Below are positions 14,714-63,266 of a DNA stretch of 64,000 bases, piece by piece; position 1 is the stretch's first letter; each line of letters begins with the position of its first letter. Below the pieces are notes generated by a model. It saw nothing but the letters and a program-made list of their open reading frames with translations. It was not told the DNA's origin and searched no databases. Both the position numbers and the translations under genes were made by a program. Origin of the DNA: Selaginella moellendorffii (taxonomy: Eukaryota; Plantae; Lycopodiophyta); the NCBI RefSeq assembly GCF_000143415.4, contig NW_003314325.1:838086-902085 (forward strand), given 5' to 3'.

Positions 14714-14859
14714 CACAGCTGATGGATCTGTAGAAGTGTTGGAGGCCAAAGTTTATATAATGGATCCCAATCTCTTGAACAAGAGCTATCACATCTAAAA
14801 CTAGTTCCATATCCATATTTCGAGTTACCAAAGAGATTGAAATATCTTTAGAGAGTTTG

Positions 14860-23689: not shown

Positions 23690-24100
23690 CTATCCCATCA
23701 GTGGCGGTGGCGCATAGTGTGGGTTCATAAGGGGAGGGGGCGCGCCGTAGTGTGGGTTCCTGTTTGCCCCTGGGCCGTCATAGTCGCTGGTGTGGACCTC
23801 TCCAAGGAGCTTCCTGCCGTTGAGAGAGCCTGGAAGAAAAAAGAGCGAGAGAGAGAGAGAGAAGAAGAAGAAGGAGAATTTATAGTTAACAACAGAAAAT
23901 GTGAAATGTAGGAGAAGATTGGCCCTGTGAGGCCAGCAAGCTCGCATCTGCAAACCAACTCAAAACAGTAAGAAATTAGATTGTGGAGGAAAATAACAAA
24001 GAAATGAAATCTATATGTGCTCTCTACCTTTGTTTCCATTAGTAGCAAAAGCGGCATTGATGAGCAGGCATGAGAGCAGGGCTGCGAGCACAAGCTTGCG
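23690..24100 (-). pseudogene. PSY-like peptide precursor pseudogene
   Basis: Start-codon region deleted, exon 2 donor deleted, 2-nt insertion at the start of exon 3, second DY motif deleted (..DYDGPGANRNPHYGAPPPLMNPHYAPPPLMG*). Confidence 0.8.
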
Positions 24101-29172: not shown

Positions 29173-30351
29173 TCAAAGAGGACTTTCTGGTACAGTGACG
29201 ACTTTGCAACCCATTTCCAGCTTCACCTTTGGTGTGATGTACTCTCCAGCCATGATATATTCGGACATGATCTCGTAAAAGTGCTCTGTGTAGTGAATGC
29301 CATCAAAAGTGAAATACTTGCTGGGATCCTTACACACCGTGTAAACAGCATTGGTCTGGTTCAGTGGAGCACACCCGCAAAGACCCTCACCATCACAGTT
29401 AAACTTGCCACCTCCACCGCAGCACGACTGGAGCGAGTTCGTGAAGCCAAACTCCTTCATATTCTCCAAAACATAGGTGTTTGCTGCAAACCAATCGAAG
29501 TAGTACACAGTGAGACCCTGGTATTTTTGCGTCAGCTCTTCCGTCAGCCTCTGGATGTTGGTGTTGAAGTAGGAGATAATCTGGGCAATCTCAACAATGC
29601 AACCATCCTTGTCATAGTGGAATGTACCAGCGGGGTACTGTTGGAAAGATTGGAGATAGTTTGGAGAGCAATCGGCACGGGGCATGTTGTAGAGCACAAC
29701 ATGGCGAGCTCCGTGGGCATATAGCTTCTGAATTCCATCGGCCAGGCCTTGGATCACGGCCGGGATGGTGACGTTGATCACGTAGCCGCCTCCCAGTGGC
29801 AAACCAAAGTTGATATCGTCTCCTCCAATCTCGACCGAGTAGAGTGCATTCTCGTACCATGGTTTGCTCGCCTGGCGACCATATCGACCCTCGACAAACT
29901 CCTGGTGGCGCACGAAGTCGTCAACCTGGGCGGACAAGACATGTGGGCTCGAGTATGGCTGGTTCTCGACCTTGATCACCGTGGCTCCGGCGTATCCAAA
30001 GTTGAGGCTCTCGAACTCGGTGCCATTGTACTTGAGGCTGGGAGTTCCAAGGTTGTCGAGGCGGAGCTTCTGGAGCAGGAGGTCGGGGATGACGAGCCCG
30101 TCGCAGTAGCGTCCAGTGGGCTTCCCGTAGGTGATCCCGTATGGGTACCTGCCCGATAGGGTCTTGCCGCCACCGGCTTCAATGTCGCGGTTGCCGCCAT
30201 CGCTGAGAGAATCTGCAAAGGTGAAGACTGCGGTTGGACAGATCGACGAGCTCGACTTTGGCGTTGCTGGTGTTGCTCGTGCCTGAGAAAGCAGCACAAT
30301 GTTAAGCAAAAGAGCAAAGATTGCAAGAACAGTTCCAGAACAAGAAGCCAT
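29173..30351 (-). CDS. GDSL esterase/lipase, intronless (copy 3)
   Basis: Open frame, a few substitutions relative to copies 1 and 2. Confidence 0.93.
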   Translation of the reverse strand: MASCSGTVLAIFALLLNIVLLSQARATPATPKSSSSICPTAVFTFADSLSDGGNRDIEAGGGKTLSGRYPYGITYGKPTGRYCDGLVIPDLLLQKLRLDNLGTPSLKYNGTEFESLNFGYAGATVIKVENQPYSSPHVLSAQVDDFVRHQEFVEGRYGRQASKPWYENALYSVEIGGDDINFGLPLGGGYVINVTIPAVIQGLADGIQKLYAHGARHVVLYNMPRADCSPNYLQSFQQYPAGTFHYDKDGCIVEIAQIISYFNTNIQRLTEELTQKYQGLTVYYFDWFAANTYVLENMKEFGFTNSLQSCCGGGGKFNCDGEGLCGCAPLNQTNAVYTVCKDPSKYFTFDGIHYTEHFYEIMSEYIMAGEYITPKVKLEMGCKVVTVPESPL

Positions 30352-33183
30352 CACAGCTGATGGATCTGTAGAAGTGTTGGAGGCCAAAGTTTATATAATG
30401 GATCCCAATCTCTTGAACAAGAGCTATCACATCTAAAACTAGTTCCATATCCATATTTCGAGTTACCAAAGAGATTGAAATATCTTCAGAGAGTTTGGTA
30501 AAAAGTTAATACCCTAAAGCAGATGTCAGAATCGGCAATCTGCTCGTGGAGTTGTATAGCAAATGTGGCAGCGCCAACGACGCTCGGGCGGAACATCTTC
30601 TCTAGGGATTTAATTCTCTTGGTGATCTTAGCCTAGTGAGGTCTTACTTGAGGCTGGATCCTTGCTTGATCGATCCTGACCTTTGTAGATTGCTACAGAC
30701 TTTCTGAGATTGTATGGATCGCTCCAGGAGGCTTGATTGGCTGGCGAGAGTCTTAAGAAGTTCGGGCAGAGAGATCTGGCGGCTTGGAATGCGATAAACG
30801 ACACTTATGCCCAGTGCGGGCTATGCAAAGAACGGCATTTGCGATTCACGAGAGGATGCTTACAAATTCACGTACACGACTCTTCTCTCCTGCTATGACA
30901 ATCTGGGCGACGTAAAAAAGATCCATGCGCACCACTGCATTTGTAATGTGGAATCCAGATAAGGTGTTTGAATAGTTGGACGTGGGGCTGTGGACTGCAA
31001 CCTAAGGATCGTGGAAGCCATCCAAGCGATAGAACAACAAGGTTTCGAGCGAGCAGCTTTATGCTGCCTGCTCTCCTCCAGATTGTGGAAGGTAGCAATT
31101 GTTGATCTGCTCAAGTCTCCAGGAATCACGCACCAATCAGTCAGGAATAGCTTGTATACAGAGTGTGATTGACATGTGAATTGCAACTCCTTTTCTCTTC
31201 ACAGATCCTTTCTGTTGTATGCGCAACTTTTGCGATGGAGCAAGAAATTTCTAATGTTTGTTTATTTTGCTAGATGTCGTGAAACAAGCAAGGCATAGGA
31301 GGACGAGCAAGCGGTGATTGCCGGGCTGGAGGAGGAGCATAGAATCAGTTAGAACGCTCAAAGTTCGTGGGTATGACCATAACCGGAGAAATCATATCAG
31401 CTGTTTTGTGGTACGCTTGTGTCTTCCAGTTGTATAAGAATTCAATCCAAGGGCCCCGTAGGAAGTGCCAACTTTGCTATGGCCTCGTCCAGCTTTATCG
31501 CAAAGTCTAGGACATCCAGAGCAAGCCAGCGTAAGGCGTTTCCCGTGAGTGGCGATCCACCGAGCACCCTCTGAGAGAGCTTCGAGCCTGTCTGCCGGCA
31601 CCATCTTCTGGCACCATCCGTCGACTGACTTGGAGCTTGGGAGAAGTTGACAGCGTCTTGTTTAAGGTACATTTTACTAACACGATCTCCCCTCCAGGAA
31701 GAAAGGAAGCGTCTCTTTCCCCGTCTAGAACCCGATCGGAAACGTTGAGAATTCCTTACCTTGGAAAAACCGGCAGATATCAAGAGCAGGATCATCACAG
31801 TTCCCGACCATCGTTTCTTCATCATAAACTTGATGTTATCATTTGGATATGTTTGCGTCTAGAGTTTCGCCAGACTTATGAGTTGGATCCTCCAGGTTTG
31901 ATCGTGGAGTTGAAAAACTCTATGCGTCCATAGTGTTCCCGTTTGAGATCTCTCGCTTTTCGCACTGAACTAAATGGTGAAACCATTGTGCTCACCGCTG
32001 CTTTGGGTGCTCGGTCTTTTGTTGCTTAAAGTTGCTCTATGCATCAATGCCGCTTCTTCTTCTTTATTGTCTCTTTCTCTTAGACCTCGTGATGCAAGGC
32101 GTCTCTGTGCGAGGCCGGACCGAGCTCACGAGCTCAAAAATTCAATGCAGGGTCAATTATAGTCAATGCAAGGTCTTCAAAGACTGTGTCTTCATTTGCT
32201 CAAGCTCGATCGCCCCAAGCTCTTCTCGAAAAACCGCCGACCCAGGAATGTATGGTATAAGATTTATCAAATGCCGGAAAGGAAGGCATTTCTTTGGACC
32301 GGAATGTAAACAACCCCGGAATGTAAACAGCATGTACCCTACCCCGACTCGAGAAGAAGACTATATCTGGCGATGCTCCACGGGTACAAAACACTCGGAT
32401 CGATCCAGGCTCTCCAAAACCCTAAACCATATCAGGGAGGAAACTCTCAATAAGAAGGTAAATTCTAATCCGTTCACTCTACATGCTCATTTGGTTATCT
32501 TGTTAGTTATGCGCCGCTCTACAGGGCAAAGGTTGGCCTCTGCCGAGGATCTGGCTAAGCACTATGGTACCAGGACTTGGCTCATGGTTTCTGAACTCTG
32601 GTTTCATAACGGGTGCCCAAGAACGGATGAGCTTGTTCAGCTGGAAAAGGTCTTGTTCGATCCGGAGATGAGAACATCTGTGAAGCTGGCTATGGCCCGG
32701 GGGAACCTTAATGTGTAGGAACTGGTTTGGAGTAGGTGAGTTTTATGCCATGGCCGTTGGCAAACGCTATATCTGTCCCGTTTCTCCTTTACTCATCCAA
32801 AACGAAGCAGTGGAAAATAAGGAACTTTTCGATCAGATCATTCACTTAAGGAGTTTATGGAAACTTGGATACCGGGGCAGTATCACTAGAAAGTTGGCAA
32901 TGTACAATCCAACCCTCGGTTCCACCAAGTTTGTCAAGCCTTTCAAACGGGATTTTTGCCCGAGTTTATCTGCTTTATGCCAGCGAAATTCATCCAAAGG
33001 CTGTTCATGAGGTTAAGGGATTGTTTTGGATCAGCTCCCTGAATATAAGTTAAAATTTGGTAAAGGTGGACTTGTGGCTGTGCTAATAAAACAGCCCCAA
33101 TAAAGGCCAAAATCATTGATAATAGGTCCCATTAAAAAAAAAAAAAAAAAAAAAAAACATTTGATACCCTAAACCTTCACTTC

Positions 33184-33434: not shown

Positions 33435-33891
33435 CTATTCTCTAGTCAGCTCAACATCAAACAACAGCAAACAACAAACTTGATACTCTCCAAGGGGAGG
33501 GGGCGCACCGTAGTGTGGGTTCCTGTTTGCCCCTGGGCCGTCACAGTCGCTGGTGTGGACCTCTCCAAGGAGCTTCCTGCCGTTGAGAGCCTGGAAGAAA
33601 AAAGAGCGAGAGAGAGAGAGAGAGAGCGAGAGAAGAAGACGAAGAAGAAGTTATAGTTAACAACAGAAAATGTGAAACGTAGGAGAAGATTATCAACCTG
33701 GCCCTGTGCAGCCAGCAAGCTCGCATCTGCAAACCAACTAAAAGCAGTAAGAAACGAGATTGTGGAGGAAAATAACAAAGAAATGAAATCTATATGTGCT
33801 CTCTACCTTTGTTTCCACTAGTAGCAAAAGCGGCAGTGATGAGCAGGCATGAGAGCAGGGCTGCGAGCACAAGCTTGCGAGGAGGAGCCAT
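33435..33891 (-). CDS. PSY-like precursor variant (DY changed to DC, second motif deleted, new C-terminus); exons 33891-33807, 33726-33698, 33590-33435
   Basis: MAPPRKLVLAALLSCLLITAAFATSGNK|DASLLAAQGQ|ALNGRKLLGEVHTSDCDGPGANRNPHYGAPPPLGEYQVCCLLLFDVELTRE*; splice sites intact. Confidence 0.65.
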
Positions 33892-38278: not shown

Positions 38279-38571
38279 GTGATAATAATTATCAGCAATA
38301 TTATCTGGCACATACATATCACATTACAAGTGTCATGAAATTATTGAGCGCTCTAGAGGAGTGAGATCGTAGAAATGCCACTATAGCTGATATGCTGGCT
38401 CAAAACTCACAAGGATCATAGCAAAGATTCTTCCAGCGATCGGCTTTTTTGCTGAAACATGGATGTCTAGAGGTGACTCAACAGCAAACAAAAGAAAACA
38501 ACAAACGTGGTAGCCGTGTAGAGGGTATAGCTCCTACACGAAAACATGGAAGAACACACAGAAACAAAGAT

Positions 38572-39010
38572 CTATCCCATCAGCGGCGGGGGTGCGTAGT
38601 GTGGGTTCATGTTCGCGCCTGGACCGCCATAGTCGCTGATCTCTCCAAGGGGCGGTGGTGCGCCGTAGTGTGGGTTCCTGTTTGCCCCTGGAGCGTCATA
38701 GTCGCTGGTATGGACCTCTCGAAGGAGCTTCCTGCCTTTGAGAGCCTGGAAGAAAGAGAGAGAACTTTTTATAACAGGAAAGGAAAAGGAAACGTAGAAG
38801 AAGATTTCTCAACCTGGCCCTGTGCAGCCGGCAAGCTTGCATCTGTAAATCCAACTCAAAACAGTGAGAAACGAGATTGTGGAGGAAGGTAACAGAGAAA
38901 TGAGATCTATATGTGCTCTCTCTACCTTTGTTTCCACTAGTAGCAAAAGCGGCAGTGATGAGCAGGCATGAGAGCAGGGTTGCGAGCACAAGCTTGCGAG
39001 AAGGAGCCAT
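38572..39010 (-). CDS. Secreted peptide precursor (95 aa) with two tandem PSY-like sulfotyrosine motifs; exons 39010-38926, 38842-38814, 38745-38572
   Basis: MAPSRKLVLATLLSCLLITAAFATSGNK|DASLPAAQGQ|ALKGRKLLREVHTSDYDAPGANRNPHYGAPPPLGEISDYGGPGANMNPHYAPPPLMG*; GT-AG introns with pyrimidine tracts, phases consistent. Confidence 0.85.
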
Positions 39011-39279: not shown

Positions 39280-41449
39280 ATGTTGGAAGCATCGAGCAAC
39301 ATCGTGGGATCGCAGCAATCCTTCTTTGCGACGCTCCTGAGCCAGTCTGGAGGCTCTGGCGATCTCGATCAAACCCGGAAGATCCACTCCCGGATAGTGG
39401 ACAGCGGCTACTCCAAAGACAAGTTTCTCCTCAATCTCATCATCCAGGCTTACGGAAAATGCGGCAGTGTCGGAGATGCGCACCGTGTCTTCTCCGCGAT
39501 CGATCACCCCAATCTCTTCTCATGGAACATTATGATCCAAGCATATGCCCGAAACGGGCATCTAGATGAAGCGTGTAACCTCTTTGATCGATCTCATTCC
39601 CCCGATCCAGTCGCATGGAATGAAATGATCACTGCCTATGCGAATCTTGGCGAGATGGAGGAAGTCAAACGATTGTTTGATCGAGTGCCAGAAAAGAGTG
39701 AAATCACCTGGACCGTGATGATAACAGCATATGCCAGAAACGGGCATCTGAACGAAGCCAGGACGGTGTTTGACGCAATGCCGATCGAGAAGAAAACCAT
39801 AGTTTCGTGGACGGCAATGCTCCAGGGCTACACCCAAAACTCCCGGATCGATCAGGCCTTCGATTTCTTTCAGACGTTCCCGGCCCACAACGTGGTGTCC
39901 ATCACCGCCATGGTGTCGGCGCTCGCGAGCCACGGCCGTGGCGACGAGGCCGAGATGCTGTTCTTATCCATGCCCGCGAGAAATTTTCTCTCCTGGACTG
40001 TGATGATCCAGGCCTACTCCAAGCAGCAGCGCATCGATCAAAGTCACCTACACGACGCTTCTTTCATGCTGTGACGATCTGGGCGATGGAGAAGAGATCC
40101 ATGCTTGTGTAGTGAGGGATGGGATCGAATGGGACGTTGCCATGTCCACTGCATTGGTGCGCTGCTACGGTCGCTGCGGAAATCCAGAGAAAGCAGTGGC
40201 TGTGTTTGAGAATTTCTCAGGGAATAAGGACGTAGGGCTGTGGACTGCGATGATCCTCTGCTTCGATCAGAACCAAAAGATCACGGAAGCCATTCCGGGG
40301 GATGGAACAGCATGGTTTTCGAGCAAGCAGCTTTACATTGGTTGCTCTTCTCCAGGGATTGTCGAGCTCTTCAAAGTCTGGGTTTAGCACAGGCATGATA
40401 AACACGATCAGCTCGAGAGCCATGGAGTTTCTGTGTTCTACTGGAGGAGATGTTTCAACCAGGGACGATCTAGTTGTTGCTACAGCACTGGTGAAATGCT
40501 TTGGAAGTCACAGGAGAATCAATGAAGCTGAGGAGGTGTTTGAGAGATTTCGACTCTGTAGATTCGACTTGGTGCTCTGGAACGCCATGGTATGGGCTTA
40601 TGCCGAGACCAGCCATCCCGAAGAAGTTCTGTTCGTGCTGAAAAAGATGGATCTGGAAGGTGGTAAGGCTGATACGTTCACGTTCGCGACTGATTTAACT
40701 GCGTGTGCTGCCAGTTGCGAGCATGCATTGCTACAAACGATCTTTCTTCACGATCGAGCGACCAGTTTGGGGCTTGGATCTGATCCAGTCGTGGTAGCAG
40801 CAGTTATCAACTCGTACTCCAAGTCCCCCAGAGGCTCGGGCTTGTGAGGAGCGCTTTCGAAGGACTAGCGACGGACAAACTAGATACAGTTGTGTGGAGC
40901 TCCATGAACATGGGATACGCACGATCAGGCCACATCCAAGACGCTCTGGAGATCTTCTCGAAGATGGATCATCCGGACAAGATCACAATCGCGCAGGTGC
41001 TGGATGCCTACGCGGATCTGGCATGCCTCAGCCAGTGCAAGGCCGCTCATCGGGATTTCGTGTCGCCAAACCAAGAGCTCGAGTCGGAGACAATGGTGGC
41101 CAACGCTCTTGTACACATGTACGCGAAGTGTGGGAGCCTGGACGAGGCCAGGAGAGTTTTCGACAGAATGAGCTTGCAGTCCAGGAACATCGTCTTGTGG
41201 ACTGCCATGATCTCGGCTTACGCCCAGCACGGCCGGAGCTCCAAGTCGATGGAGCTGTTCCAGAGGATGCAGCAGCAAGGAGTGGAGCCGAATCAAGTGA
41301 CTTTCATCAGTATCTTGAGCTCTTGCAGCCACTCGGGCTTGATCGATCAAGCAGCGTACTGTTTCTACAGCATGGAGCAAGATCACAGCTTGGTGGCGTC
41401 CCAGATTGAATTGCTTTTGAAACTGAATGGAATCAAAGCCGCTTTCTAA
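39280..41449 (+). pseudogene. PLS-type PPR gene, frameshifted/deleted (least-degraded copy of the PPR remnants in the array)
   Basis: Many PPR motifs (IIQAYGKCGSVGDAHRVF, NLFSWNIMIQAYARNGHL, ALVHMYAKCGSLDEARRVF, PNQVTFISILSSCSHSGL) across 4 ORFs in different frames; no E/DYW end visible. Confidence 0.85.
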
Positions 41450-41520: not shown

Positions 41521-44209
41521 TCAAGCACGAATGAAATCGTTTACCTGGACACTAATGGGGCTCCGTACATAATGGACGCCATCTGACCAAGTGATGGAGC
41601 CAAAAGCATAGTGTCCCACCGAACGAACTATTTTAGCAGCCTCAAACGTGATCTCATACAACAGTTTTGTCCCAGAGCTGTTGAAATGGAGAATGTCTGG
41701 TTTGACTGTAACTTTGACGCTATGCGGCTCTTCCACAATTGCCCTGTAACTTGAGTATGGTGTTCCTACGTTTGTGACAACTCTTTTCACTGTTTTGGCT
41801 CCCACCAGGTTGGAGATTGTTATCGAGGGATAGTTCAGCTCAGTGGCTGCTAGAGTCTGAGACGAGCATTTGGAGTGTTCAATCTTGCAAATGCTGCCCA
41901 GACTGCAGCAGAAGAGAGCATAGTCTTGAGGAGTGGTAACGTAAACAAGGCCTGGATCTGCTGCTTTGGTTGGATTGATGTGTCCGGCACCATATCCGAA
42001 GGGGTTGGAATAACTTAGTGTGTAACTATCAGTTATTATATCCCTTGTGTTGTCCATGTTCCAAGCTGTAAGCGTGATACTTCAGGACAGAACTTGCGAA
42101 ACCCAAATACCTGTTGTCATAATTGCTGACTTGATTGCGGAGGGGCTCCAATCTGGATGTAAGGATTTAAGCAAAGCCGCGACACCGGAAACGTGAGGAC
42201 AGGACATGGACGTGCCACTCATCGCTCCAAAACTCTTTGCTGAGCTGCTTGAATGGCTTTTTGGAGGAATTGCAGCGATTATGTCAACGCCAGGAGCAAT
42301 GATATCAGGCTGCAATGCCGGTGATATATCAGATGTTTGAATTTGAAAACCAAATGACTCACAAACCTTCAGAATATCAGGAGAAATTGGGTTTGGTCCC
42401 CTGGCTGAGAAGGTTGCAACAGCAGGGGCTGGTCCAATCCCGGTCACAGTTTCAGGTGGATGGATATAGATCGTTGACGATCTGCAATTGGAGGTAGCCA
42501 AGTTCAAATGATGAAGATAAACAAGATCGATCTGGCTTACTTCTCATGTGATCTGTGACCTAAGAGCTGAACACCGCATGCACTGGGAACTACAAATATA
42601 GGGAGCGACAAGTTTCCTGTTATCGATATCAATCCGAATGTATCGGTGATTATAATTCCGGTGGCTCCAGCCTTTTCGATAGCATCTAGGTCCACGGGAA
42701 GCTCCGCGCTGGAAGCAAAGCAAAGGACATACTTCCCTCTCAGGGTGGTACCATTTAATCTCGCTTCTGTGCAATAGCTGCACAGAATTCACCTCATCAG
42801 AGAGATACTAGTGTCCGAATGTATGCATACCCATCCTCCCCAGAGGCAATTCCATGCAATCCAACTTCAGAACCGGTCCGGTGCTGTGATGGCGTTGCCT
42901 GTCCAAAAACTTCAAAAATGAAGGTTCATACAGCCATTTTGCAAACCTGGCAAGAGGTAGCATTGTCGGGAAGAACGATCTTTGCATAGAAACCCCGGTC
43001 AATAGTGCTTGCTCCCACACTCAGAATCCAGGGAGCAGTGTTCGTGATTGTGGACGGATATGGTCCCGAATTGCCACCACTTGCCACAACCAAAATCCCA
43101 TTCTGGACTGCATGAAATGCGGCAATTGCAATGCCATCCGTGTTGTAGTCGTACGTATTGTCCACGCCTGCAGAAATGGACAGGATGTCGACTCCGTCAT
43201 GAATTGCGTAGTCGATTGCAGAAATAATGTCTGCTTCGAAGCTGCTACTCTCTTCATAGAGTTTGTACATTGCAAGCCTAGCCATTGGTGCTCCACCACG
43301 AGCTATTCCACTGCCAAATTCATCATCGCTGGCTCCATATACAAGCCTGCCTACAGCGGTCGACGATGTATGCGTGCCGTGAGAGTTTTTGTCCCTGGGT
43401 GATCTGTAGTCGTCCACGCTAGGATCCACACTTTGGTCGAAATATCGAGCTCCTATAAGTTTCCTGCATTCAACCGTTAAAACACATGAAACGACTATAC
43501 TTCCAAGTCACTCGGAGGTCCCAACAACGAACCTATTACAGTTTGAAGCCGTGAAGTTCTCGCCTATTTGACATATTCCCTTCCATCTTGTGGGAACTGC
43601 TGGCATTGATTTGTCATTGAAACTCTCAGCTTCAGGCCATACACCTGCAGAAAAGTTCCGAGATTTTGGTATCTGCTGCACACTAGAATGTGAAACTTTA
43701 ACAAACACCTGAATCCACAACCCCAACAATTACGTCCACTCCGAAGCCAGATTCTTGCAAAATGCCTTTGGGCTTCATGACATCCAATCCAAGGAAGTCC
43801 CAGCTGTGAGTTGTATGCAGCTTCATCTTTTTGCTGCGGAACACAGACACAACTCCAGGCATCTCTGTTACAGAAGTATTAGCCTGAAAACTGAGAGCAC
43901 AGCCACTTACTGGACAAAGCTTTTGCATGCCCTGGATTCATATCTGCTGCGAAACCGCTGAATCCATGCCGGTAGCTGTACAAAATAGCACGTTTTGCCA
44001 AATCTTCACTTCCCAACACACTGGCCAGCGTTTCGTGATGGGATTTCGTTACCAGTTCGTGGTCTTCAACGGTTTTCTTCCCCATGTAGACTATATAAAC
44101 CTACGATGGCACCAGTTACCGACCGCTGTAGACTCAATAAAATACTTACCTCTCCCATCAAGCACTGGATTTGAGCCAGAAGAATAAGAAAAGCGATTAG
44201 TGGTGCCAT
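41521..44209 (-). CDS. Subtilisin-like serine protease (plant SBT, S8A) with signal peptide, I9 prodomain, PA and Fn3-like domains; multi-exon
   Basis: [20 protein letters not shown]|[36 protein letters not shown] (Asp), HGTHTSST (His), SGGNSGP (Asn), [11 protein letters not shown] (Ser), [14 protein letters not shown]; the exons checked are in phase. Confidence 0.92.
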
Positions 44210-48173: not shown

Positions 48174-51100
48174 TGAAACGAATCGACTCAACTAGAGATT
48201 GAATTGATAACACGCTGTTATAATCTATCTCAGTCTAACTGTCGCGACCGTTGACTCTTCAGCTTGTTGGCATATTCCCCTGAATATTAACACTCCCACT
48301 CAAGCTGAACGTCGACGTTGCGTCAGTTCTTTGGCTGCACTCTAAGTGCCTGTGCATGCTGCTGGAACAGAGCTGGAGCAAGAGCTTTGGTGAAGATATC
48401 CGCCACCATCTCCTTGGTAGTGCAGTAGACCAGCTCCACAGTCTGCAGAGCAACCTGTTCACGTATAAAATGGAACTGAACCTGAATGTGCTTGGTCCTG
48501 CGATGGAACTTCGGATTTTTCGCCAATGCTATGGCTCCTTGATTATCGCAGAAGAGCTTCGTCGCTTCCTCCTGCTTATAGCTGAGCCCGTCCAGCAAAG
48601 TTCTCAGCCAAATGCACTCCTTGGCTGCTTGAGTGATGCCGATATACTCTGCCTCAATGCTTGACAATGCTATGACTGGCTGTTGCTGGCTGTTCCATGT
48701 AACCGCTGCACTGCCCAGAGTAAAAAAATAACCTGAAGTTGATCGCTGCTGATCCACTTCGCTAGCCCAATCTGCATCTGAGTATCCCTGAAGCAGCAGC
48801 CACGAGTGCTTTGTCTGGCGCTCATAGCTTAGCACAAACTCGCTGGTGCTCTTCAGGTACCGGAAAATCCACTTAACGGCTTGCCAATGCTGGAAGCCGG
48901 GGTTGGCCAAGAACTGGGACACTACTCCCACTGAGTAGGCAATGTCCGGACGAGTACACACCATCAGGTAGACCAGGCTGCCCACCATCTGACGGTATGG
49001 AATCCGATCCATCGCTCGCTTGTCACCTTCTGTGGCCGGAGACATCTCCTGACTAAGATGCAATCCCACCTCCATTGGTGTTGACGCCGCACTGACGTCC
49101 TGAAGCTTGAACTTCTCGAGCAGCTCGTCAATGTACTTCTTTTGTGACATCTGAAGCACACTCCTCCCCCTGTCACGGAAGATCTCAATGCCGAGGCAGT
49201 ACTTGACTGGTCCAAGGTCCACCATCTTGAATTTGGAGCTCAGGTCCTGCTTCAGCTGCTGAATCAGCCGCTTGCTCTTGCTGAGCAGCAGACAATCATC
49301 CACATAAAGGGCTAGGATGATGAGCTTGCCTCCCACTTGCTTCTGGTACACGTTGGTGTCTGCTGACATGCTGGTGAAGCCAAGTGACAGCAGAAACGAG
49401 TTCATCTTTGAGAACCACGCTCGGGGTGACTGCTTCAACCCGTAAAGGGCCTTTTTAAGACGACACACAAGGTGCTCCTGGCCTGGCTTGACAAAGCCTG
49501 CCGGCTGCTCGATATAGACCTCCTCATCAAGGTCACCGTTGAGGAATGCTGTGGTTACGTCCATGTGCTCCACCTCCATATCCTCCTGAGCAGCTAAATT
49601 GAGCAGCAGTCGGATAGAGGTGAGCTTCACCACTGGTGAAAAAGTCTCGTAAAAATCCACACCTTCGACCTGAGAAAATCCGCGAGCTACAAATCGGACT
49701 TTGTGTCGAGTGCTGCCATCCGGAGTCGTCTTCACTCGCAGGAGGAACTTGGTTTTGATTACCTTCCGCCCTAGTGGGAGCTTCACTAAGTCCCACGTCT
49801 GGTTCGCCATCAACGCATCGTATTCCACCTGACGAGCGGCTTCCCACTTGGATGCGTCTGGACCAGCTAAGGCTTCCTCCAAGGTCTGAGGCACCAAAGC
49901 ATCTCTGCCTTGGCTGAAGAGTAGCATGAACGTTGACCCTTCCTGTTCTGCACCTGCCTCCTCGCTGGAAGCAAAGTAAAACGACTCACCAGAGCCTGAG
50001 GGAGCTTGAGGAGCCGATGCTGCTCTTTCTCTCACTGCCTTAGCCTCTGCTCTGGACTCACGCTTGGCAACAGCAAGATCACGCTGCTCCTGGTACTGGT
50101 GCCCTGCCTCTGTGAGCTTTGTTACTCGAGTGGATTGACGTAACGGTGGAGCTGAAACGGCAACCTCTCTGCCATCTGAAGCCTGCTGATCAAGACCCAC
50201 TGCCTGATCACTCGCTTGAGAGCTCCCCCCCTGATCGGCCTGACTCCCACCCGCTGGTGAGATCGGATTACCGCCACCTGCAGCTGGAGGCTCACTAACT
50301 CCAGCTCCGATTGCTGAACCTGGCCCCAGATCACGCTGGCTCCCACCGGCTCCATGCCCTGTGGCTGAACCCTGCGTACCTGGCTGGCGTCCGCTCCTCG
50401 TTCTCCCATAACTCGCTGCCCTAACTTCTTCATCCGAGTTATCCGAGTCCGAGGTAACCTCGGGCGATACCAAAGTTGGCGGTGGTGGGAGGGCCCGAGT
50501 GCCGTAAGTTCTGGTCTCATCGAAGATGACATCTCTGGCCACGATCAACTTCTGAGTCTCCAGGTTGAACAACTTGTAGCCTTTCATTTGTTCGGAGTAG
50601 CCGACGAGAACACACTTCTGACTGGTTCTTTCAAGCTTGCTGCGATGATGTCGCTTTACATGAGCGTAGCAGACACTCCCGAACACTCGCAGATGGCTGA
50701 TGTCTGGTTTACTCCCATACCAAGCTTGATAGGGAGTTTGACCCGAAACTGCAACAGTGAGCTGTCTGTTCCTTAGATAACCGGCGGTCTCCATCGCCTC
50801 ACACCAAAAAAACTTTGGAAGGCCTGAGTCTTCCAGTAGGGTTCTTGCTACATCTTGCAGCGTCCTGTTCATCCTCTCTGCTACACCGTTTTGCTGCTGA
50901 GTGTCTGGGATGGAGAATTGACGTTGTATTCCAGCTGAACTACAAAACTCATCAAATTCTCTCGACACAAACTCGCCACCGCCATCGCTCCTGAATGCCT
51001 TGATCAGCTTTCCTGTCTGGAGCTCCACCTGAGCTTTGTAGTCCTTGAACTTCTGGAACACCTCTGATTTCTTCCTCAGGAACTTGATGGCCACGATGCG

Positions 51101-53033
51101 AGAAAAATCGTCCACGAACGTGACAAAGTACTGTTTCCCGTCTCTGGACATATTCGGCATCGTGCCAACATCAGAGTGAACCAAGTCCAGGATTCCCTTA
51201 GCTCGGTTAGTGGATGCAGTTGGATGAGGGAGCTTGTGAGCTTTACCCAGTGCACACGGCTCGCAAAACGAGCTGCCACCTGCTGGAGGAGTTATGCGGA
51301 GGCCGATCACCAGCTCCTGCTTGCTTAGCTGCTTCAACGCCTGCTGGTTGGTGTGACCCAATCTCCTGTGCCAAGTCGCAGTGTCGACTGCCTTCTGGGC
51401 ACCGGCGTAGCACAACCGCTGTGGCTGGATCACTTCTGCATTCAGCCTGTAAAGGCCCGAGTACCTACGTCCACTGGCCAGCATCTTGTCATCTGATCCT
51501 TTGATCCTGCAGCCATTGTTGTCAAACTCGACTTTAAGGCCATGATCAGCGATCTTCCCGACTGAGAACAGCATCTTCGGGACTCCAGGAACGTAGTACA
51601 CGTTGTGAATGGGAACCACTTGTCCAGATGCTAGCTGCACCTGAGTTGTCCCCACACCTTTCACTTCATGAGAGTAGTCATCGCCTAGGTAAATCCTCTG
51701 GTCCTTGACTGGTAGCAGCTTGGAGAACAGCTCTCGGACGTGTGTCATGTGCTGGTTTGCTCCGGAGTCGACCCACACAACCTCTGCTGCTGTGGTACTG
51801 ACTGTACTCACTCGATCGGGCTGTGTCGGCTGGTGACTCTAGTGCTTCTCTGCACTCACCCTCCTTGCCATGAACAGACTGTCATGGCACTCAGCTTCAT
51901 CTTCATCTTCCTCATCTGAAGTTGCTGCCTCTCTCTTCGAATGAGCAGATTTTGCATAGTTTGCCACCTGCTTCTTCTTGCCTTTCTTCGCCATCGCATC
52001 CTTCCTGGCCTGCCATGCCTTCTTTGCCTCAGCATGAGTGCAGTCTCTGGCAAAATGACCTGGTGCTTTGCATGCGTTGCATCTGTCATCACGTTTGTTG
52101 CGCTTGCTCTTGCTGGTGCCGCCTTTGTCCACCTTATTCACTGGGCCCAGCCGATCCCACACTGTGGTTGACCGCTTGCCGTTTGCTGTGAACAGAGCAA
52201 GTTCTACCTTCTCCTCCTTGTTCTTTTCCTCGGGGCTGAGGAAGTTCTCAAGAGCTGAGAGTTCTGCAACAATCTCCTCAAAGGTGAGGTGAGAATTCAT
52301 GAGATGGGCTCCAGAAACGAGTAAGGTTGTGGAGAGTCCCTTGAACAGCGCTGATGTGAGCTCGTCGTCACCGACCGGATTCTCCTGAGCGTCAGTGATC
52401 TGCTGTGCAAGGCCCATAAGGCGACTGGCATAGTCATTTACTGAACTACTGCCCTATTGACACCCGTTGAACTGGGTTTTCAGATCGATCAACCGTGCCC
52501 TGGTGCATGTGCCAAAAACCTGGCAGATCTTCTCCCAATTCGCCTTCGCTGTATCCTCCATGTTCAGGTGGCTCCTGTATCTTTTTGCCAGAGCGCGACC
52601 TAAGATGCCCAACGCCTCGTCGTTCTTGGCATCCCAATCCTTGCGCTCTGCTTTCAAGGTGTCCACCGGATCCTCATCCTTTGTTTCTTTTTCACCCTCC
52701 TTCGCTTTCTTCTTGGTCTGCCGGACTGGTGATGGAGGTTGCCGTTCCTTTCCCCTCACCACATTCCACAGATCCTTTTCCAGGAAGTAGAGTTGCATCT
52801 GAAGTTTCCACGACGGAAAATCTTTGCCATCGTAGACTTCGAGCACTTGCGACGACGACGGAGACATGCTGCTGCGGGAAACTCGTCTTGATCAGAATCT
52901 GAGCTCCGATACCATGAAACGAATCGACTCAACTAGAGATTGAATTGATAACACGCTGTTATAATCTATCTCAGTCTAACTGTCGCGACCGTTGACTCTT
53001 CAGCTTGTTGGCATATTCCCCTGAATATTAACA
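48174..53033 (-). mobile_element. Full-length Ty1/copia LTR retrotransposon
   Basis: Identical 119-bp LTRs (48174-48292, 52915-53033; TG..CA), TSD TGTTT (48169-48173, 53034-53038), PBS TGGTATCGGAGC (52914-52903), PPT GAGTGGGAG (48301-48293). Confidence 0.97.
48323..52867 (-). CDS. Copia gag-pol polyprotein in one frame, interrupted by two in-frame TAG (52454-52456, 51839-51841)
   Basis: Gag N-terminus, CNACKAPGHFARDC zinc knuckle, DSGA protease, HRRLGH..CEPC plus DDE integrase, YVDD RT, YSDADWA..EAEY RNase H; INT before RT indicates copia. Confidence 0.93.
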
Positions 53034-55041: not shown

Positions 55042-56210
55042 TCAAAGAGGACTTTCTGGTACAGTGACGATCTTGCAACCCATTTCCAGCTTCACCTTTG
55101 GTGTGATGTACTCTCCAGCCATGATATATTCGGACATGATCTCGTAAAAGTGCTCTGTGTGAATGCCATCAAAAGTGAAATACTTGCTGGGATCCTTACA
55201 CACCGTGTAAACAGCATTGGTCTGGTTCAGTGGAGCACACCCGCAAAGACCCTCACCATCACAGTTAAACTTGCCACCTCCACCGCAGCATGACTGGAGC
55301 GAGTTCGTGAAGCCAAACTCTTTCATATTCTCCAAAACATAGGTGTTTGCTGCAAACCAATCGAAATAATACACAGTGAGACCCTGGTATTTTTGCGTCA
55401 GCTCCTCCGTCAGCCTCTGGATGTTGGTGTTGAAGTAGGAGATAATCTGGGCAATCTCAACAATGCAACCATCCTTTTCATAGTGGAATGTACCAGCGGG
55501 GTACTGTTGGAAAGATTGGAGATAGTTTGGAGAGCAATCGGCACAGGGCATGTTGTAGAGCACAACATGACGAGCTCCGTGAGCATATAGCTTCTGAATT
55601 CCATCGGCCAGGCCTTGGATCACGGCCGGGATGGTGACGTTGATCACGTAGCCGCCTCCCAGTGGCAAACCAAAGTTGATATCGTCCCCTCCAATCTCGA
55701 CCGAGTAGAGTGCATTCTCGTACCATGGTTTGCTCGCCTGGCGACCATATCGACCCACGACAAACTCCTGGTGGCGCACGAAGTCGTCAACCTGGGCGGA
55801 AAAGACATGGGCTCGAGTATGGCTGGTTCTCGACCTTGATCACCGTGGCTCCGGCGTATCCAAAGTTGAGGCTCTCGAACTCGGTGCCATTGTACTTGAG
55901 GCTGGGAGTTCCAAGGTTGTCGAGGCGGAGCTTCTGGAGCAGGAGGTCGGGGATGACGAGCCCGTCGCAGTAGCGTCCAGTGGGCTTCCCGTAGGTGATC
56001 CCGTATGGGTACCTGCCCGATAGGGTCTTGCCGCCACCGGCTTCAATGTCGCGGTTGCCGCCATCGCTGAGAGAATCTGCAAAGGTGAAGACTGCGGTTG
56101 GACAGATCGACGAGCTCGACTTTGGCGTTGGTTGCTCGTGCCTGAGAAAGCAGCACAATGTTAAACAAAAGAGCAAAGATTGCAAGAGCAGTTCCAGAAC
56201 AAGAAGCCAT
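55042..56210 (-). pseudogene. GDSL lipase pseudogene (copy 4)
   Basis: Frameshifts near 56130 and 55805; codon deletion in DGIH(Y)TE. Confidence 0.9.
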
Positions 56211-59455: not shown

Positions 59456-59762
59456 CTATCCCATCAGTGGCGGTGGCGCATAGTGTGGGTTCATGTTCGC
59501 GCCTGGACCGCCATAGTCGCTGATCTCTCTAAGGGGAGGGGGCGCGCCGTAGTGTGGGTTCCTGTTTGCCCCTGGGCCGTCATAGTCGCTGGTGTGGACC
59601 TCTCCAAGGAGCTTCCTGCCGTTGAGAGCCTGGAAGAAAAAAGAGCGAGACAGAGAGAGAAGAAGAAGAAGGAGAAGGAGAAGAACTGAAAGTTAACAAC
59701 AGAAAATGTGAAACGTAGGAGAAGATTATCAACCTGGCCCTGTGAGGCCAGCAAGCTCGCAT
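59456..59762 (-). pseudogene. PSY-like precursor lacking exon 1 (exons 2-3 intact)
   Basis: ALNGRKLLGEVHTSDYDGPGANRNPHYGAPPPLREISDYGGPGANMNPHYAPPPLMG*; intron 1 is fused to a PPR remnant at about 59795. Confidence 0.8.
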
Positions 59763-62461
59763 CTGCAAACCAACTCAAAACAGTAAGAAACGAGTTCTGA
59801 ATGAGTTACAAGAAGTTTGGGCAGAGAGATCTGGTGGCTTGGACCGCGATGAACGACGCTTATGCCCAGTGCGGGCTATGCAAAGAGGCATTTGCGACTT
59901 ACTAGAGGATGCCTTGACAGATTTACGTACACTCCTGAGTATTCATGCTTGTCTCGTGAGGGATGGAATCAAATGGGACGTCGTCATTGGTCGCTGTGGA
60001 AATCCCAGGCAGTGTCATGTTCGGCATAAGCACAGGCATGATCAACACAATCAGCATGGAGTTTCTGTGCTCTCAGGGACGATCTTGTCAATTAGTTGTT
60101 CTTTGGAAGTCAAGGGAGAATGAGGAGGTGTTTGCTCTATAGCTTCGACTTGGTGTTTTGGAACGCCATGGTTTGGGCTTGCCGCGTTCTAACTGCGTGT
60201 GCTACCAGTTGCCAGCATGCGCTGCTTCAAACGAACGAACTCCATGATCGAGCGGCCAGTTTGGATCCAGTTGTGGTACTCCAAGCCTCAGAGGCTCGGC
60301 CTTGGATGGACAAACGAGATGCAGTGGTGCAAAGCTCCTAAACGTTAGTTTCTATCCTTGTAACGGGCCCTTATCCAGGACTTGGCGATGGATCTGTCTA
60401 GCATCCTTGTGATCAATTCGATGCCATCAATCTTTCCTGATCGAGTGTTTTTCTGTCTGCAGAGATGCTGAATTTTACAAGGAAATAGGAAAAAAATAAA
60501 AAAATAAAAATTGAAACTTGCGCAGCTTGATCGAATCATCAAAGACACAAGGCCATGCTTGGATTCTAGAGATCCTCTTCAAGATGTACTTGCAATGATC
60601 GGGGAGAGAGGCTTTGTGGAGAATATATTTCTGGATGAGGCTCGAGAAAGAAATTGCCAAGGATAAGGTTCTACAGGAAAAAAAAGCTGATCAAAGCTCA
60701 CATTTGTGTCATATCTCTTTTTTTTTTTGTTTTTACTTGCGTTTCAGAGAAGTGCAGGTATGAATCCTTCTCACACACAAACATCTCAGTGTGATATTAT
60801 CCTCAAAGAAAGATATGAGGCCGTGATAATCATGGGCAGATCGGCCGACTGCCTCATGAGAACACAACACGCTTGCGTTTTTCCTGGAGGGGAGATCGTG
60901 CACGTAAACATCACAGAGCGAGGACCTAGCTCAACCCGAACAGAAACGTTAACTGTGGAAAACCGGCAGGAATCATGTCGACCTTCGTATCAAAATTGTT
61001 GACCATGTGGCATAGGGCGTCTTCCAAATATCCAGAATACCCAACCGAGGCAAATGCGTCATTGCAACACACGCATTTCTTCTCTGGTGCCAAATCCGGA
61101 TATGGCCTCTTTCACAACACCAGCATCGGCAAAAACACCAAGCATTGTCGCCCAATTCCTCCAGTTCCGGGCTCATGCCTTTTCTTTCTGTGAGCAATAG
61201 GACATTTCCGCACTTGTTGCGTTTGCCAACAGCCACGATAAAACTCAGTTCCTACACATTCCCGCAGGCATGTCAATGTTAGCAGCAGAATGGGTTTCTA
61301 CGCGGAAGGAAGTGGATCCCTCCCGCGTAAAGCACATAAAGTCGGCGGTATAAGATACGCGTATCCGAATATAGGATAAAGCCTTTTTATGCAAAGAAAA
61401 CGTAAACCATTAAAAAGGCTGTAATATATTTTATTTAAAACATCTCGTTTAGTTTTGTTTGAATGTATGTTGTGGCGCGCTGTTTCCTACGCGTTAGAAG
61501 CCCCGCTGCCAATGCCATCCTCACCAAGACAGTTGCTTTCCATGGATGATGCCATGGGATGCTTAAAGAATCGCAAACCTGCCTCGATCTGCCATGGCCT
61601 CCCACCGCCATAGCTATGGCGAGTCTAGGAAATGATCCTTACCCAATTAGCTCCTTGCCAGAGGCGCCATTCTGGATTTCAATCCCCGAGCGATTGAGTT
61701 GGCGGAGAAAGCGATCCGGCCAACCCAGCCTCGAGCTCCCAGGGTCAGGGATGAGCAATCGAGAGCTTGAAGCTCCCATCTTCTACGATGCATGATAGTT
61801 AGTCGCATGGAAAGTAAGAAAAACACAGATCTGTGGGCGAGGGCAAGCGCATTGACGAGAAAATTGTCTCCTGCGGCCTCGATCGTCATAGCTTCCTCAC
61901 GAACCTCGTCATGGAAATGTATGGAAAGTACTGGCGCGGGGGATACGTCTTGGGAATCTTCCACAAGACGGAAGATGGAGATGTTTTCTTTGCGGCATTT
62001 GCCCAAAACGGGTAAGTTCTGGCGTTCTCCCGGCAAATGCCTCTCGATCTAATTCCGTCACATTCTTGCAGCTAATCCCGATGCAAGCTCTCGTCTTCCA
62101 GGAGATTGAATTCAAGGACGCCAGCTCCTCGAAGGGATCAAGCCCAACCACATCTCCTTTTTCACGGATGGTCAAGCTCCACCTCTCGAGCTAAGACTTA
62201 CCAAAATTCTTCATAAACCGATTAAACAAAACTTTATGTTGGGCAACAAATTCCTTTAGATAGCCGGCACGAACGCCTATGATGCTGATCTACCAGCATC
62301 AACCATTCTCTCGTGAGCAGCTGAACCGTCAAAACGGAAGGTTGACCCTGGGCTTTTCGCATTGGGAGCTTTTCGAGCCCACAAGTATGCTGGCTGCATT
62401 GTCGATATGGTATGAAGTTCGTTTCAATTTCTGAAAACCATTGGACTTCACAAACTTCTAA

Positions 62462-62827: not shown

Positions 62828-63266
62828 CTATCCCATCAGCGGCGGGGGTGCGTAGTGTGGGTTCATGTTCGCGCCTGGACCGCCATAGTCGCTGATCTCT
62901 CCAAGGGGCGGGGGCGCGCCGTAGTGTGGGTTCCTATTTGCCCCTGGAGCGTCATAGTCGCTGGTATGGACCTCTCCAAGGAGCTTCCTGCCTTTGAGAG
63001 CCTGGAAGAAAGAGAGAGAACTTCTTATAACAGGAAAGGAAAAGGAAACTTAGAAGAAGATTTCTCAACCTGGCCCTGTGCAGCCGGCAAGCTTGCATCT
63101 GTAAATCCAACTCAAAACAGTGAGAAACGAGATTGTGGAGGAAGGTAACGGAGAAATGAGATCTATATGTGCTCTCTCTACCTTTGTTTCCACTAGTAGC
63201 AAAAGCGGCAGTGATGAGCAGGCATGAGAGCAGGGCTCCGAGCACAAGCTTGCGAGAAGGAGCCAT
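62828..63266 (-). CDS. Two-motif PSY-like secreted peptide precursor (95 aa); exons 63266-63182, 63098-63070, 63001-62828
   Basis: MAPSRKLVLGALLSCLLITAAFATSGNK|DASLPAAQGQ|ALKGRKLLGEVHTSDYDAPGANRNPHYGAPPPLGEISDYGGPGANMNPHYAPPPLMG*. Confidence 0.85.

What the first reader, a model, noticed from the sequence alone, without database searches (positions are those of the whole stretch)
38572..39010. Hidden 3-exon precursor encoding two tandem PSY-like sulfopeptides
Seen: splicing three tiny exons, which the ORF track misses, yields a 95-aa protein with a signal peptide, an RKLL basic motif and two repeats, DYDAPGANRNPHYGAPPP and DYGGPGANMNPHYAPPP. A second intact copy lies at 62828-63266. Established: Arabidopsis PSY1 is DY(SO3)GDPSANPKHDPGVPPS (Asp-Tyr sulfation site, P-x-A-N, His, Hyp-rich tail), and Xanthomonas RaxX mimics it (DYPPPGANPKH); characterised PSY precursors carry one C-terminal peptide. 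Inference: this is a polyprotein-type PSY precursor releasing two different sulfated glycopeptides, each with one extra residue between Asn and His (N-x-x-x-H), possibly a lineage-specific ligand class. Differences between the two intact copies within the peptide repeats are synonymous (AAC/AAT, GCA/GCG, CCA/CCC), hinting at constraint.
Basis: partly seen in the sequence, partly recalled or inferred. Interest (0 to 1): 0.85.

Follow-up and report, generated by a model that had tools for sequence, protein, structure and literature searches.

The report
Spikemoss two-motif PSY-like peptide genes
Two small unannotated three-exon genes in the spikemoss Selaginella moellendorffii most likely encode secreted precursors that each carry two copies of a divergent version of the plant growth peptide PSY, which makes them a lycophyte variant of a known hormone type and not a new class.

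Summary
On the minus strand, exons 39010-38926, 38842-38814 and 38745-38572 join through two GT..AG introns (83 and 68 nt) into a 95-codon frame. It has a signal-peptide-like start, GRKLL, then DYDAPGANRNPHYGAPPP and DYGGPGANMNPHYAPPP. Copy B (63266-62828) has the same structure.

The window is S. moellendorffii scaffold GL377629.1. It holds three further copies: C lacks exon 1, E has one motif and is cut short, and D is a pseudogene. Both A and B are intact on the other haplotype scaffold, one with an in-frame 9-nt deletion.

Inside the motifs I count 9 synonymous and 3 replacement changes; in the rest of exon 3, 1 and 3. One 150-nt RNA-seq read crosses both introns at the predicted borders, at low expression.

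The strict family motif DYXXXX[AP]NXXHXP is not met: His sits one residue late and Pro is absent at His+2. I therefore call the genes PSY-like, not PSY. Sequence searches found only two Selaginella 'hypothetical proteins'. Multi-motif PSY precursors are already documented (rice OsPSY1 has four repeats), so the polyprotein novelty fails.

Sulfation, processing and receptor are inferred. The scan already noted what is probably the other-haplotype allele (s1-394651).

The parts
38572..39010 (-). Gene A, the whole three-exon coding unit (95 codons plus stop)
   Evidence: No gene is called at the equivalent places in the public annotation. No 31-100 aa protein containing exon 3 is in the 5.8-billion-cluster collection.
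38926..39010 (-). Exon 1 of A: ATG plus 28 codons and the first base of the split codon. Signal-peptide-like: n-region R5 K6, h-region L7-F22, A-F-A before T24.
   Evidence: The Kyte-Doolittle 11-residue mean reaches 2.77. The RNA read ends its exon 1 block at 38926.
38843..38925 (-). Intron 1 (83 nt, GT..AG)
   Evidence: Zero RNA depth in X21 between the exon blocks.
38814..38842 (-). Exon 2 of A (29 nt; completes codon D, then ASLPAAQGQ)
   Evidence: The hap2 allele has an in-frame 9-nt deletion here. Covered by the spliced read.
38746..38813 (-). Intron 2 (68 nt, GT..AG)
38572..38745 (-). Exon 3 of A (57 codons plus TAG): pro-region, two motifs, short tail
38722..38733 (-). RKLL, an R-x-L-L site of the SBT6.1/S1P type, six residues before the first DY
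   Evidence: The RXLX/RXXL specificity of SBT6.1, and its presence in AtPSY1-5, come from PMC7913133. Cleavage here is inferred.
38650..38703 (-). Motif 1, DYDAPGANRNPHYGAPPP
38584..38634 (-). Motif 2, DYGGPGANMNPHYAPPP. It lies 69 nt (23 codons) after motif 1, and the two repeat DNAs are 83% identical over 60 nt.
62828..63266 (-). Gene B, second intact copy. Exons are 63266-63182, 63098-63070 and 63001-62828; motifs are 62959-62906 and 62890-62840.
   Evidence: It lies in a segment of at least 4.5 kb that is 98.3% identical to the A segment.
59456..59794 (-). Copy C: exons 2 and 3 with both motifs intact, but no homologous exon 1. Similarity ends at the duplication border near 59799. The public model P0001 (EFJ14184.1/EFJ13162.1, 109 aa) gives it a different 5' end.
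33435..33891 (-). Copy E: exons 1 and 2 intact. Exon 3 has one motif with Cys in place of the DY tyrosine, then a new 16-aa tail and a stop.
   Evidence: The hap2 allele keeps DY (P0002 = EFJ13159.1).
23693..24100 (-). Copy D, a pseudogene: ATG deleted, intron 2 donor deleted, 2-nt insertion at the start of exon 3, and a 36-nt deletion that fuses the motifs

Best explanation
Genes A and B are real, low-expressed, unannotated genes of Selaginella moellendorffii. [quoted passage not shown]

Shown:
- the three-exon structure;
- its conservation in four copies (two paralogs on each of two haplotypes);
- purifying selection focused on the two repeats;
- a spliced transcript.

Inferred by analogy with Arabidopsis PSY1 and other DY peptides:
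1. The signal peptide is removed, probably after A-F-A23.
2. In the Golgi, TPST sulfates the Tyr of each S-D-Y.
3. Prolines of the APPP tail are hydroxylated and possibly arabinosylated.
4. An S1P/SBT6.1-type subtilase cuts at RKLL, and further subtilases trim to the Asp.
5. Two slightly different peptides of about 17-19 residues are released.
6. These would bind the single Selaginella receptor of the PSYR clade (At1g17230/At2g33170/At5g63930) and, as in Arabidopsis and moss, relieve receptor-driven growth restraint.

The peptides keep DY, P5 and A7-N8 of PSY. His comes one residue later (N-x-x-x-H), and the H-x-P proline is missing.
For: - Structure: GT..AG introns and an intact frame are kept in A_h1, B_h1, A_h2 and B_h2. 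The only indel is in frame, a 9-nt deletion in exon 2 of A_h2.
- Public gene model: the model for a paralog (P0002) joins exons 1, 2 and 3 at the same points.
- Constraint: motif codons show 9 synonymous and 3 replacement events. The binomial probability under neutrality is 2.6e-4. The rest of exon 3 shows 1 synonymous and 3 replacement events. D, Y, P5, G6, A7, N8, N10, H12, Y13 and PPP do not vary in the six two-motif copies.
- RNA: in run X21 one 150-nt read lies in three blocks, 38686-38744, 38813-38842 and 38926-38986, with zero depth in both introns. The 1-nt offset at intron 2 is an equivalent placement of a shared G.
- Architecture: the gene meets the published selection criteria for PSY candidates. 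These are a DY start, a length of 60-200 aa, the motif in the second half, and a secretion signal.
- Peptide alignment: PAM30 alignment to AtPSY1 beats shuffles that keep DY fixed (z 2.0 and 2.6). Alignment to RGF1 or MpRGF does not (z at most 0.6).
- Language-model search: the second nearest of 7.7 million clusters is 'putative Protein PSY3-like' from Streptophyta, at 0.81. That score is a lead only.
- Partners in the species: S. moellendorffii has TPST and one receptor of the PSYR clade. Furumizu et al. 2021 name PSY orthologs only for moss, liverwort and spruce (PMC8462819). AtPSYR1-3 are those three loci (PMC13618415).
Against: - The strict family motif DYXXXX[AP]NXXHXP is not matched by any copy: 0 hits in the window.
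- phmmer against 1.84 billion representatives found only the two Selaginella paralog models and no known PSY. Pfam and PDB gave nothing.
- The peptide-level similarity test is weak (p 0.015-0.04) and is not significant against moss PpPSY1.
- RNA support is one read pair. Its two mismatches fit a haplotype-2-type allele better than copy A itself.
- No relative outside this species was found, so deep conservation is unknown.
- No modification, cleavage or receptor step was observed.
Confidence: 0.65

Rival explanations
1. The peptides are DY sulfopeptides of another class (RGF/GLV-like, or a separate lycophyte class). They would signal through a receptor other than the PSYR ortholog, for example one of the three Selaginella RGI-clade kinases.
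For: His at position 12 is in the same register as in RGF1, DYSNPGHHPPRHN. P5-G6 are also shared with RGF1 (PMC8462819 Table 1). The strict PSY motif is not met. Selaginella has three RGI-clade receptors.
Against: The RGF hallmark, a C-terminal His-Asn at positions 12-13, is replaced by His-Tyr followed by a Pro-rich extension. A7-N8 is a PSY feature, not an RGF feature. Alignment scores to AtRGF1 and MpRGF do not exceed shuffles (z -0.2 to 0.6).
Confidence: 0.12
2. The genes encode small secreted Pro-rich proteins without hormone function, such as cell-wall or defence peptides. The DY..P.AN resemblance to PSY would then be convergent or accidental.
For: No detectable homology to any known family by phmmer, Pfam or PDB. 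The family is seen in one species only. It sits in a fast-evolving tandem array with pseudogenised copies.
Against: Constraint is concentrated exactly on the two DY-initiated repeats and not on the flanks. An upstream R-x-L-L site, the precursor length and the position of the motifs all match post-translationally modified peptide precursors. The nearest named language-model cluster is PSY3-like.
Confidence: 0.15
3. The copies are young, decaying duplicates with no present function. Their intact frames would reflect recent duplication or gene conversion, not selection.
For: A and B are 98-99.5% identical within a haplotype. Three of the five copies in the window are damaged or truncated. Expression is very low.
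Against: Synonymous changes outnumber replacements 9 to 3 inside the motifs across six copies, including the more diverged C type (pS 0.28-0.32 against pN 0.013). The only indel is in frame. Splice sites are kept in all four A/B copies, and a spliced read exists.
Confidence: 0.05

Closest known systems
Arabidopsis PSY1 (DYGDPSANPKHDPGVPPS) and the PSY family, defined by DYXXXX[AP]NXXHXP
   Same: - Secreted precursor of 60-200 aa.
- Peptide in the C-terminal half, starting with Asp-Tyr.
- P5 and A7-N8 present, then a His and a Pro-rich tail.
- An R-x-L-L type site upstream, as reported for AtPSY1-5 (PMC7913133).
   Different: - His is at position 12, not 11.
- There is no Pro two residues after His.
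- A second, invariant Tyr follows His.
- There are two motifs per precursor.
- No sequence search links the two.
Rice OsPSY1 (Os05g40850)
   Same: A PSY precursor with several tandem PSY-like repeats, four nearly identical ones according to Pruitt et al. (10.1101/116897). The multi-peptide architecture is therefore already known.
   Different: The rice repeats have the canonical N-x-x-H-x-P spacing and are nearly identical to each other. Over motif 2's 17 positions, the Selaginella repeats differ at 3 aligned positions plus a one-residue indel (Gly14 of motif 1).
Root-knot nematode MigPSY3
   Same: A PSY-like peptide with altered internal spacing that still promotes Arabidopsis root growth (PMC10629525). 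Spacing changes therefore need not abolish activity.
   Different: Its two-residue insertion lies between DY and N, not between N and H. It is a pathogen mimic without a pro-domain.
Physcomitrium patens PpPSY1 (DYEKPCANKKHDPSVCKNG) and the moss PSYL peptides
   Same: Non-seed-plant DY..P.AN peptides. PpPSY1 acts through two PSYR-clade receptors (PMC13618415). Divergent 'PSY-like' subfamilies exist in bryophytes (10.1101/2024.05.13.593875).
   Different: PpPSY1 has the canonical N-x-x-H-x-P. Since moss and angiosperms share that spacing, the Selaginella spacing is probably derived.
RGF/GLV/CLEL peptides (RGF1, DYSNPGHHPPRHN)
   Same: DY start, P5-G6, and His at position 12.
   Different: RGFs end in His-Asn at positions 12-13 and lack A7-N8. 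The Selaginella peptides continue as H-Y-(G)-A-P-P-P.

Membership tests
[quoted passage not shown] | N-terminal secretion signal | tested here: met
   Exon 1 has basic R5 and K6, then a 16-residue hydrophobic core (Kyte-Doolittle 11-mer mean up to 2.77), then A-F-A fitting the -3/-1 rule. This is a heuristic check only; SignalP was not available.
[quoted passage not shown] | Precursor of 60-200 aa with the motif in the second half (criteria of Pruitt 2017 and Tost 2021) | tested here: met
   The precursor is 95 aa. The motifs occupy residues 53-70 and 76-92 (criteria).
[quoted passage not shown] | Motif begins with invariant Asp-Tyr (the sulfation site) | tested here: met
   Both motifs do so in all six two-motif copies. 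Copy E of this haplotype has Asp-Cys.
[quoted passage not shown] | Complete 13-residue motif DYXXXX[AP]NXXHXP (DY, N, H and P conserved in 31 of 32 aligned PSYs, PMC7913133) | tested here: not met
   The regex has 0 hits in the six-frame translation. DY.{4}[AP]N.{3}H has 7 hits, all in the gene copies. Pro lies at His+4 in motif 1 and His+3 in motif 2.
[quoted passage not shown] | Sequence similarity to known PSYs detectable by search | tested here: inconclusive
   phmmer against 1.84 billion representatives found no PSY. PAM30 alignment to AtPSY1 gives z 2.0-2.6 against shuffles, and alignment to PpPSY1 is not significant. ESM feature rank 2 is 'PSY3-like' at 0.81. A PSY-family HMM could not be built, because no PSY precursor sequence was available by reference.
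[quoted passage not shown] | Tyr sulfation by TPST, Hyp or Hyp-arabinose on the C-terminal prolines, and an 18-aa mature peptide | not testable with these tools
   This needs peptidomics. TPST is reported for S. moellendorffii (PMC8462819).
[quoted passage not shown] | Perception by PSYR-clade LRR receptor kinases | not testable with these tools
   One S. moellendorffii member of the At1g17230/At2g33170/At5g63930 clade is reported (PMC8462819 Table 3). Binding is untested.
RGF/GLV/CLEL | 13-residue DY peptide ending in His-Asn (or a C-terminal Asn) | tested here: not met
   Positions 12-13 are His-Tyr in every copy and the peptide continues. Alignment to AtRGF1 and MpRGF is no better than shuffles.
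CIF | DYxxxxPxPPLxxPxPF pattern (query used in PMC8462819) | tested here: not met
   Read directly: position 7 is Ala, and there is no PxPPL or PxPF.
PSK | YIYTQ pentapeptide | tested here: not met
   Absent from all exon translations.

The most novel reading that the evidence does not exclude
The one-residue shift of His (N-x-x-x-H-Y, without H-x-P) defines a lycophyte-specific ligand subclass. It would have co-evolved with the single Selaginella PSYR-clade receptor, or would use a different receptor. The two non-identical repeats, with position 11 of motif 2 varying P/L/R between copies, would give peptides of different affinity or function from one precursor.
Probability: 0.2. Interest if true: 0.6.

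Novelty: new variant of a known kind. Interest (0 to 1): 0.4.

Why it matters
Selaginella has the sulfotransferase and one receptor of the PSYR clade. The main survey of non-flowering plants named PSY ligands only for moss, liverwort and spruce. These genes are concrete candidate ligands for the lycophyte receptor. They also offer a natural spacing variant for asking which positions of PSY the receptor reads. Finally, they show that standard annotation and motif scans (DYXXXX[AP]NXXHXP) miss such genes. The multi-peptide architecture itself is not new.

Tried and rejected
**Searches that found nothing**
- A word-index search with exon 3 found nothing. With P0001 it found only P0001 and P0002.
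- phmmer of exon 3 against 1.84 billion representatives gave only the two Selaginella models, plus one spurious low-complexity hit, P0003.
- Pfam on exon 1, exon 3, P0001, P0002 and the antisense ORF 38449-38892 gave no family.
- PDB sequence search gave nothing.

**Reads and literature**
- Runs X1 and X6, labelled as guessed RNA, carry the introns: a 464-nt contig spans 38681-39144. They say nothing about splicing.
- No paper in the held library names a Selaginella PSY. The supplements of PMC8462819 are not held.

**Readings rejected**
- RGF, CIF and PSK were considered and rejected on their defining residues.
- A non-gene or antisense-ORF reading was considered and rejected.

- The joined 95-aa protein was not sent to any search, fold or look-up tool. 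Exons were searched apart by reference, and only the split codon (GAT) was read in a script.
- No structure was predicted, because a short Pro-rich peptide precursor is expected to be disordered.

Full report
**What is there**

Read on the minus strand, 39010-38572 holds an ATG exon of 85 nt. An 83-nt GT..AG intron follows, then a 29-nt exon, a 68-nt GT..AG intron, and a 174-nt exon ending in TAG. I translated the exons separately by reference:
- Exon 1: MAPSRKLVLATLLSCLLITAAFATSGNK.
- Split codon G|AT: D.
- Exon 2: ASLPAAQGQ.
- Exon 3: ALKGRKLLREVHTS DYDAPGANRNPHYGAPPP LGEIS DYGGPGANMNPHYAPPP LMG*.

The sum is 95 codons. Copy B at 63266-62828 has the same part lengths and splice sites.

**Where it is**

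The window matches GL377629.1 of the Selaginella moellendorffii assembly GCA_000143415.2 at 100% (L002; names).

The locus is a complex tandem array in which PSY-like genes alternate with single-exon GDSL-lipase genes. A subtilase gene, a PPR gene, a kinase fragment and a Copia element are also present.

Besides A and B there are three more copies:
- **C (59794-59456)** keeps exons 2 and 3 with both motifs. It loses homology upstream exactly at the border of the segment of at least 4.5 kb that carries B. The public annotation models it as the 109-aa hypothetical protein P0001, with another 5' end.
- **E (33891-33435)** keeps exons 1 and 2. It has one motif with Cys in place of the DY tyrosine and a new 16-residue tail.
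- **D (24100-23693)** is a pseudogene.

No gene is called at A or B in either haplotype's public annotation. No protein of 31-100 aa containing exon 3 exists in the 5.8-billion-cluster collection.

**Is it a gene?**

Four lines of evidence agree.

1. *Conservation.* The second haplotype scaffold GL377635.1 (L001, L003) carries intact A and B alleles with both GT..AG introns. The only length change is an in-frame 9-nt deletion in exon 2 of A_h2.

2. *Constraint.* In the six two-motif exon 3 sequences, the 35 motif codons show 9 synonymous and 3 replacement events. The other 22 codons show 1 synonymous and 3 replacement events.
   - With 25 synonymous and 80 non-synonymous sites in the motifs, three or fewer replacements out of twelve has probability 2.6e-4 under neutrality.
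   - The three replacements hit motif positions that are 'x' in PSY alignments: A/G at position 4 of motif 1, and P/L/R at position 11 of motif 2.

3. *Public models.* The public model of the E-type allele (P0002) joins exons 1, 2 and 3 at the same points.

4. *RNA.* In RNA-seq run X21 (raw reads, about 12% of the run read), the depth bins show one 150-nt read split into 38686-38744, 38813-38842 and 38926-38986, with no depth in either intron.
   - The one-base offset at intron 2 is an equivalent placement of a G shared by the exon 3 start and the intron start.
   - The read is not in the joint table, because that table needs three reads. This is therefore my inference from the bins.
   - Its two mismatches (38721, 38980) fit a haplotype-2-type A/B allele.
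   - Expression is low: two fragments among 9.2 million records.
   - Reads in X22 carry the C/D/E-type substitutions, so other copies are transcribed too.
   - The runs labelled as guessed RNA (X1, X6) contain the introns and are uninformative.

**What it resembles**

The published operational definition of a PSY candidate has four parts: an Asp-Tyr start, a length of 60-200 aa, the motif in the second half, and a signal peptide (10.1101/116897; PMC7913133). These are met. The signal peptide was judged only by its n/h/c features.

The first eight residues fit DYxxxx[AP]N, and P5 is shared with AtPSY1 and moss PpPSY1.

The full motif DYXXXX[AP]NXXHXP is not met. His is at position 12 in every copy and there is no Pro at His+2 (0 canonical hits, 7 hits with one extra residue).

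The remaining similarity evidence is limited:
- Alignment to AtPSY1 exceeds shuffles that keep DY fixed only modestly (z 2.0 and 2.6). Alignment to PpPSY1 and to RGF peptides does not.
- A language-model neighbour search put a Streptophyta 'PSY3-like' cluster second, at 0.81, which is a lead only.
- phmmer, Pfam and PDB show no link to anything known.

I therefore call the genes PSY-like and do not file them as PSY members.

The main rival, RGF/GLV, shares the His register. It fails on its hallmark His-Asn end and on A7-N8.

**How it probably works (inferred)**

1. The signal peptide is cleaved.
2. TPST sulfates the two S-D-Y tyrosines.
3. The APPP tails are hydroxylated and possibly arabinosylated.
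4. An SBT6.1/S1P-type enzyme cuts at RKLL. Its specificity is RXLX/RXXL, a site also present in AtPSY1-5 (PMC7913133).
5. The N-terminus is trimmed to Asp, and two peptides are released.

The likely receptor is the single S. moellendorffii member of the At1g17230/At2g33170/At5g63930 clade (PMC8462819 Table 3). That clade holds the Arabidopsis PSYRs and the moss PSY receptors (PMC13618415). None of these steps was observed here.

**Novelty**

[quoted passage not shown] Spacing variants can also be active: nematode MigPSY3 has a two-residue insertion and still promotes root growth (PMC10629525).

What is new is threefold:
- the lycophyte occurrence, since Furumizu et al. 2021 name PSY orthologs only for P. 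patens, M. polymorpha and Picea abies, and no paper in the held library names a Selaginella PSY;
- the N-x-x-x-H-Y spacing;
- the clustered, partly decaying gene family.

**Earlier notes of this scan**

- s1-394651 describes a 430-letter two-domain PSY-like gene on another piece of this genome and reached the same reading. 430 nt is exactly the length of A_h2, so it is probably the other-haplotype allele.
- s1-392287 and s1-392253 concern copy B and the array beyond the window end.
- Other notes report further PSY-like genes elsewhere in the genome, which I did not test.

**Limits**

- The evidence comes from one species, and RNA support is one spliced read.
- SignalP was not available, and no PSY HMM could be built.

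Noticed in passing
window 41521-43429 (-), and L001:19663-20624: A subtilase gene (Peptidase_S8 plus fn3_6 ORF pieces) lies about 2.5 kb upstream of gene A, with a PPR gene (39280-41449, +) between them. The other haplotype also has a subtilase call near the array. Subtilases process DY-peptide precursors, so the linkage may or may not be meaningful.
   Followed up: partly
window 13535-14749, 19328-20542, 29173-30387, 55042-56185 (-): Four tandem copies of a single-exon GDSL-lipase gene (three intact 404-aa ORFs and one split) alternate with the PSY-like copies, in repeat units 5.8-26 kb apart.
   Followed up: partly
window 33545-33547 versus L003:10293-10448: Copy E has TGT (Cys) where the other-haplotype allele has TAT, the Tyr of the DY sulfation site. 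Both alleles end after one motif with the same new tail, YQVCCLLLFDVELTRE. This is a single-motif variant that is polymorphic for the key tyrosine.
   Followed up: partly
window 38572-39010 and 62828-63266; L003:5363-5792; L001:6667-7105: A and B are more alike within a haplotype (99.5% in hap2, 98.0% in hap1) than alleles are between haplotypes (97.3-97.7%). This suggests gene conversion or repeated duplication.
   Followed up: partly
window 38602-38604 (codon 48 of exon 3) and its equivalents: The residue just before His in motif 2 is Pro (CCA) in hap1 A, B and C. It is Leu (CTA) in A_h2 and Arg (CGA) in B_h2. That makes two independent replacements at one site in an otherwise invariant motif.
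   Followed up: no
window 48323-52417 (-): A Copia-type retrotransposon: a 1162-aa ORF with gag_pre-integrs, rve and RVT_2 domains, plus a zf-CCHC gag ORF. It lies between the two halves of the array.
   Followed up: no
window 59794-59960 and P0001: The public 109-aa model for copy C starts with a hydrophobic MLIVLIMPVLMP... segment taken from unrelated upstream sequence. Whether C is expressed with this alternative first exon is unknown. RNA reads of C/D/E type exist in run X22.
   Followed up: no
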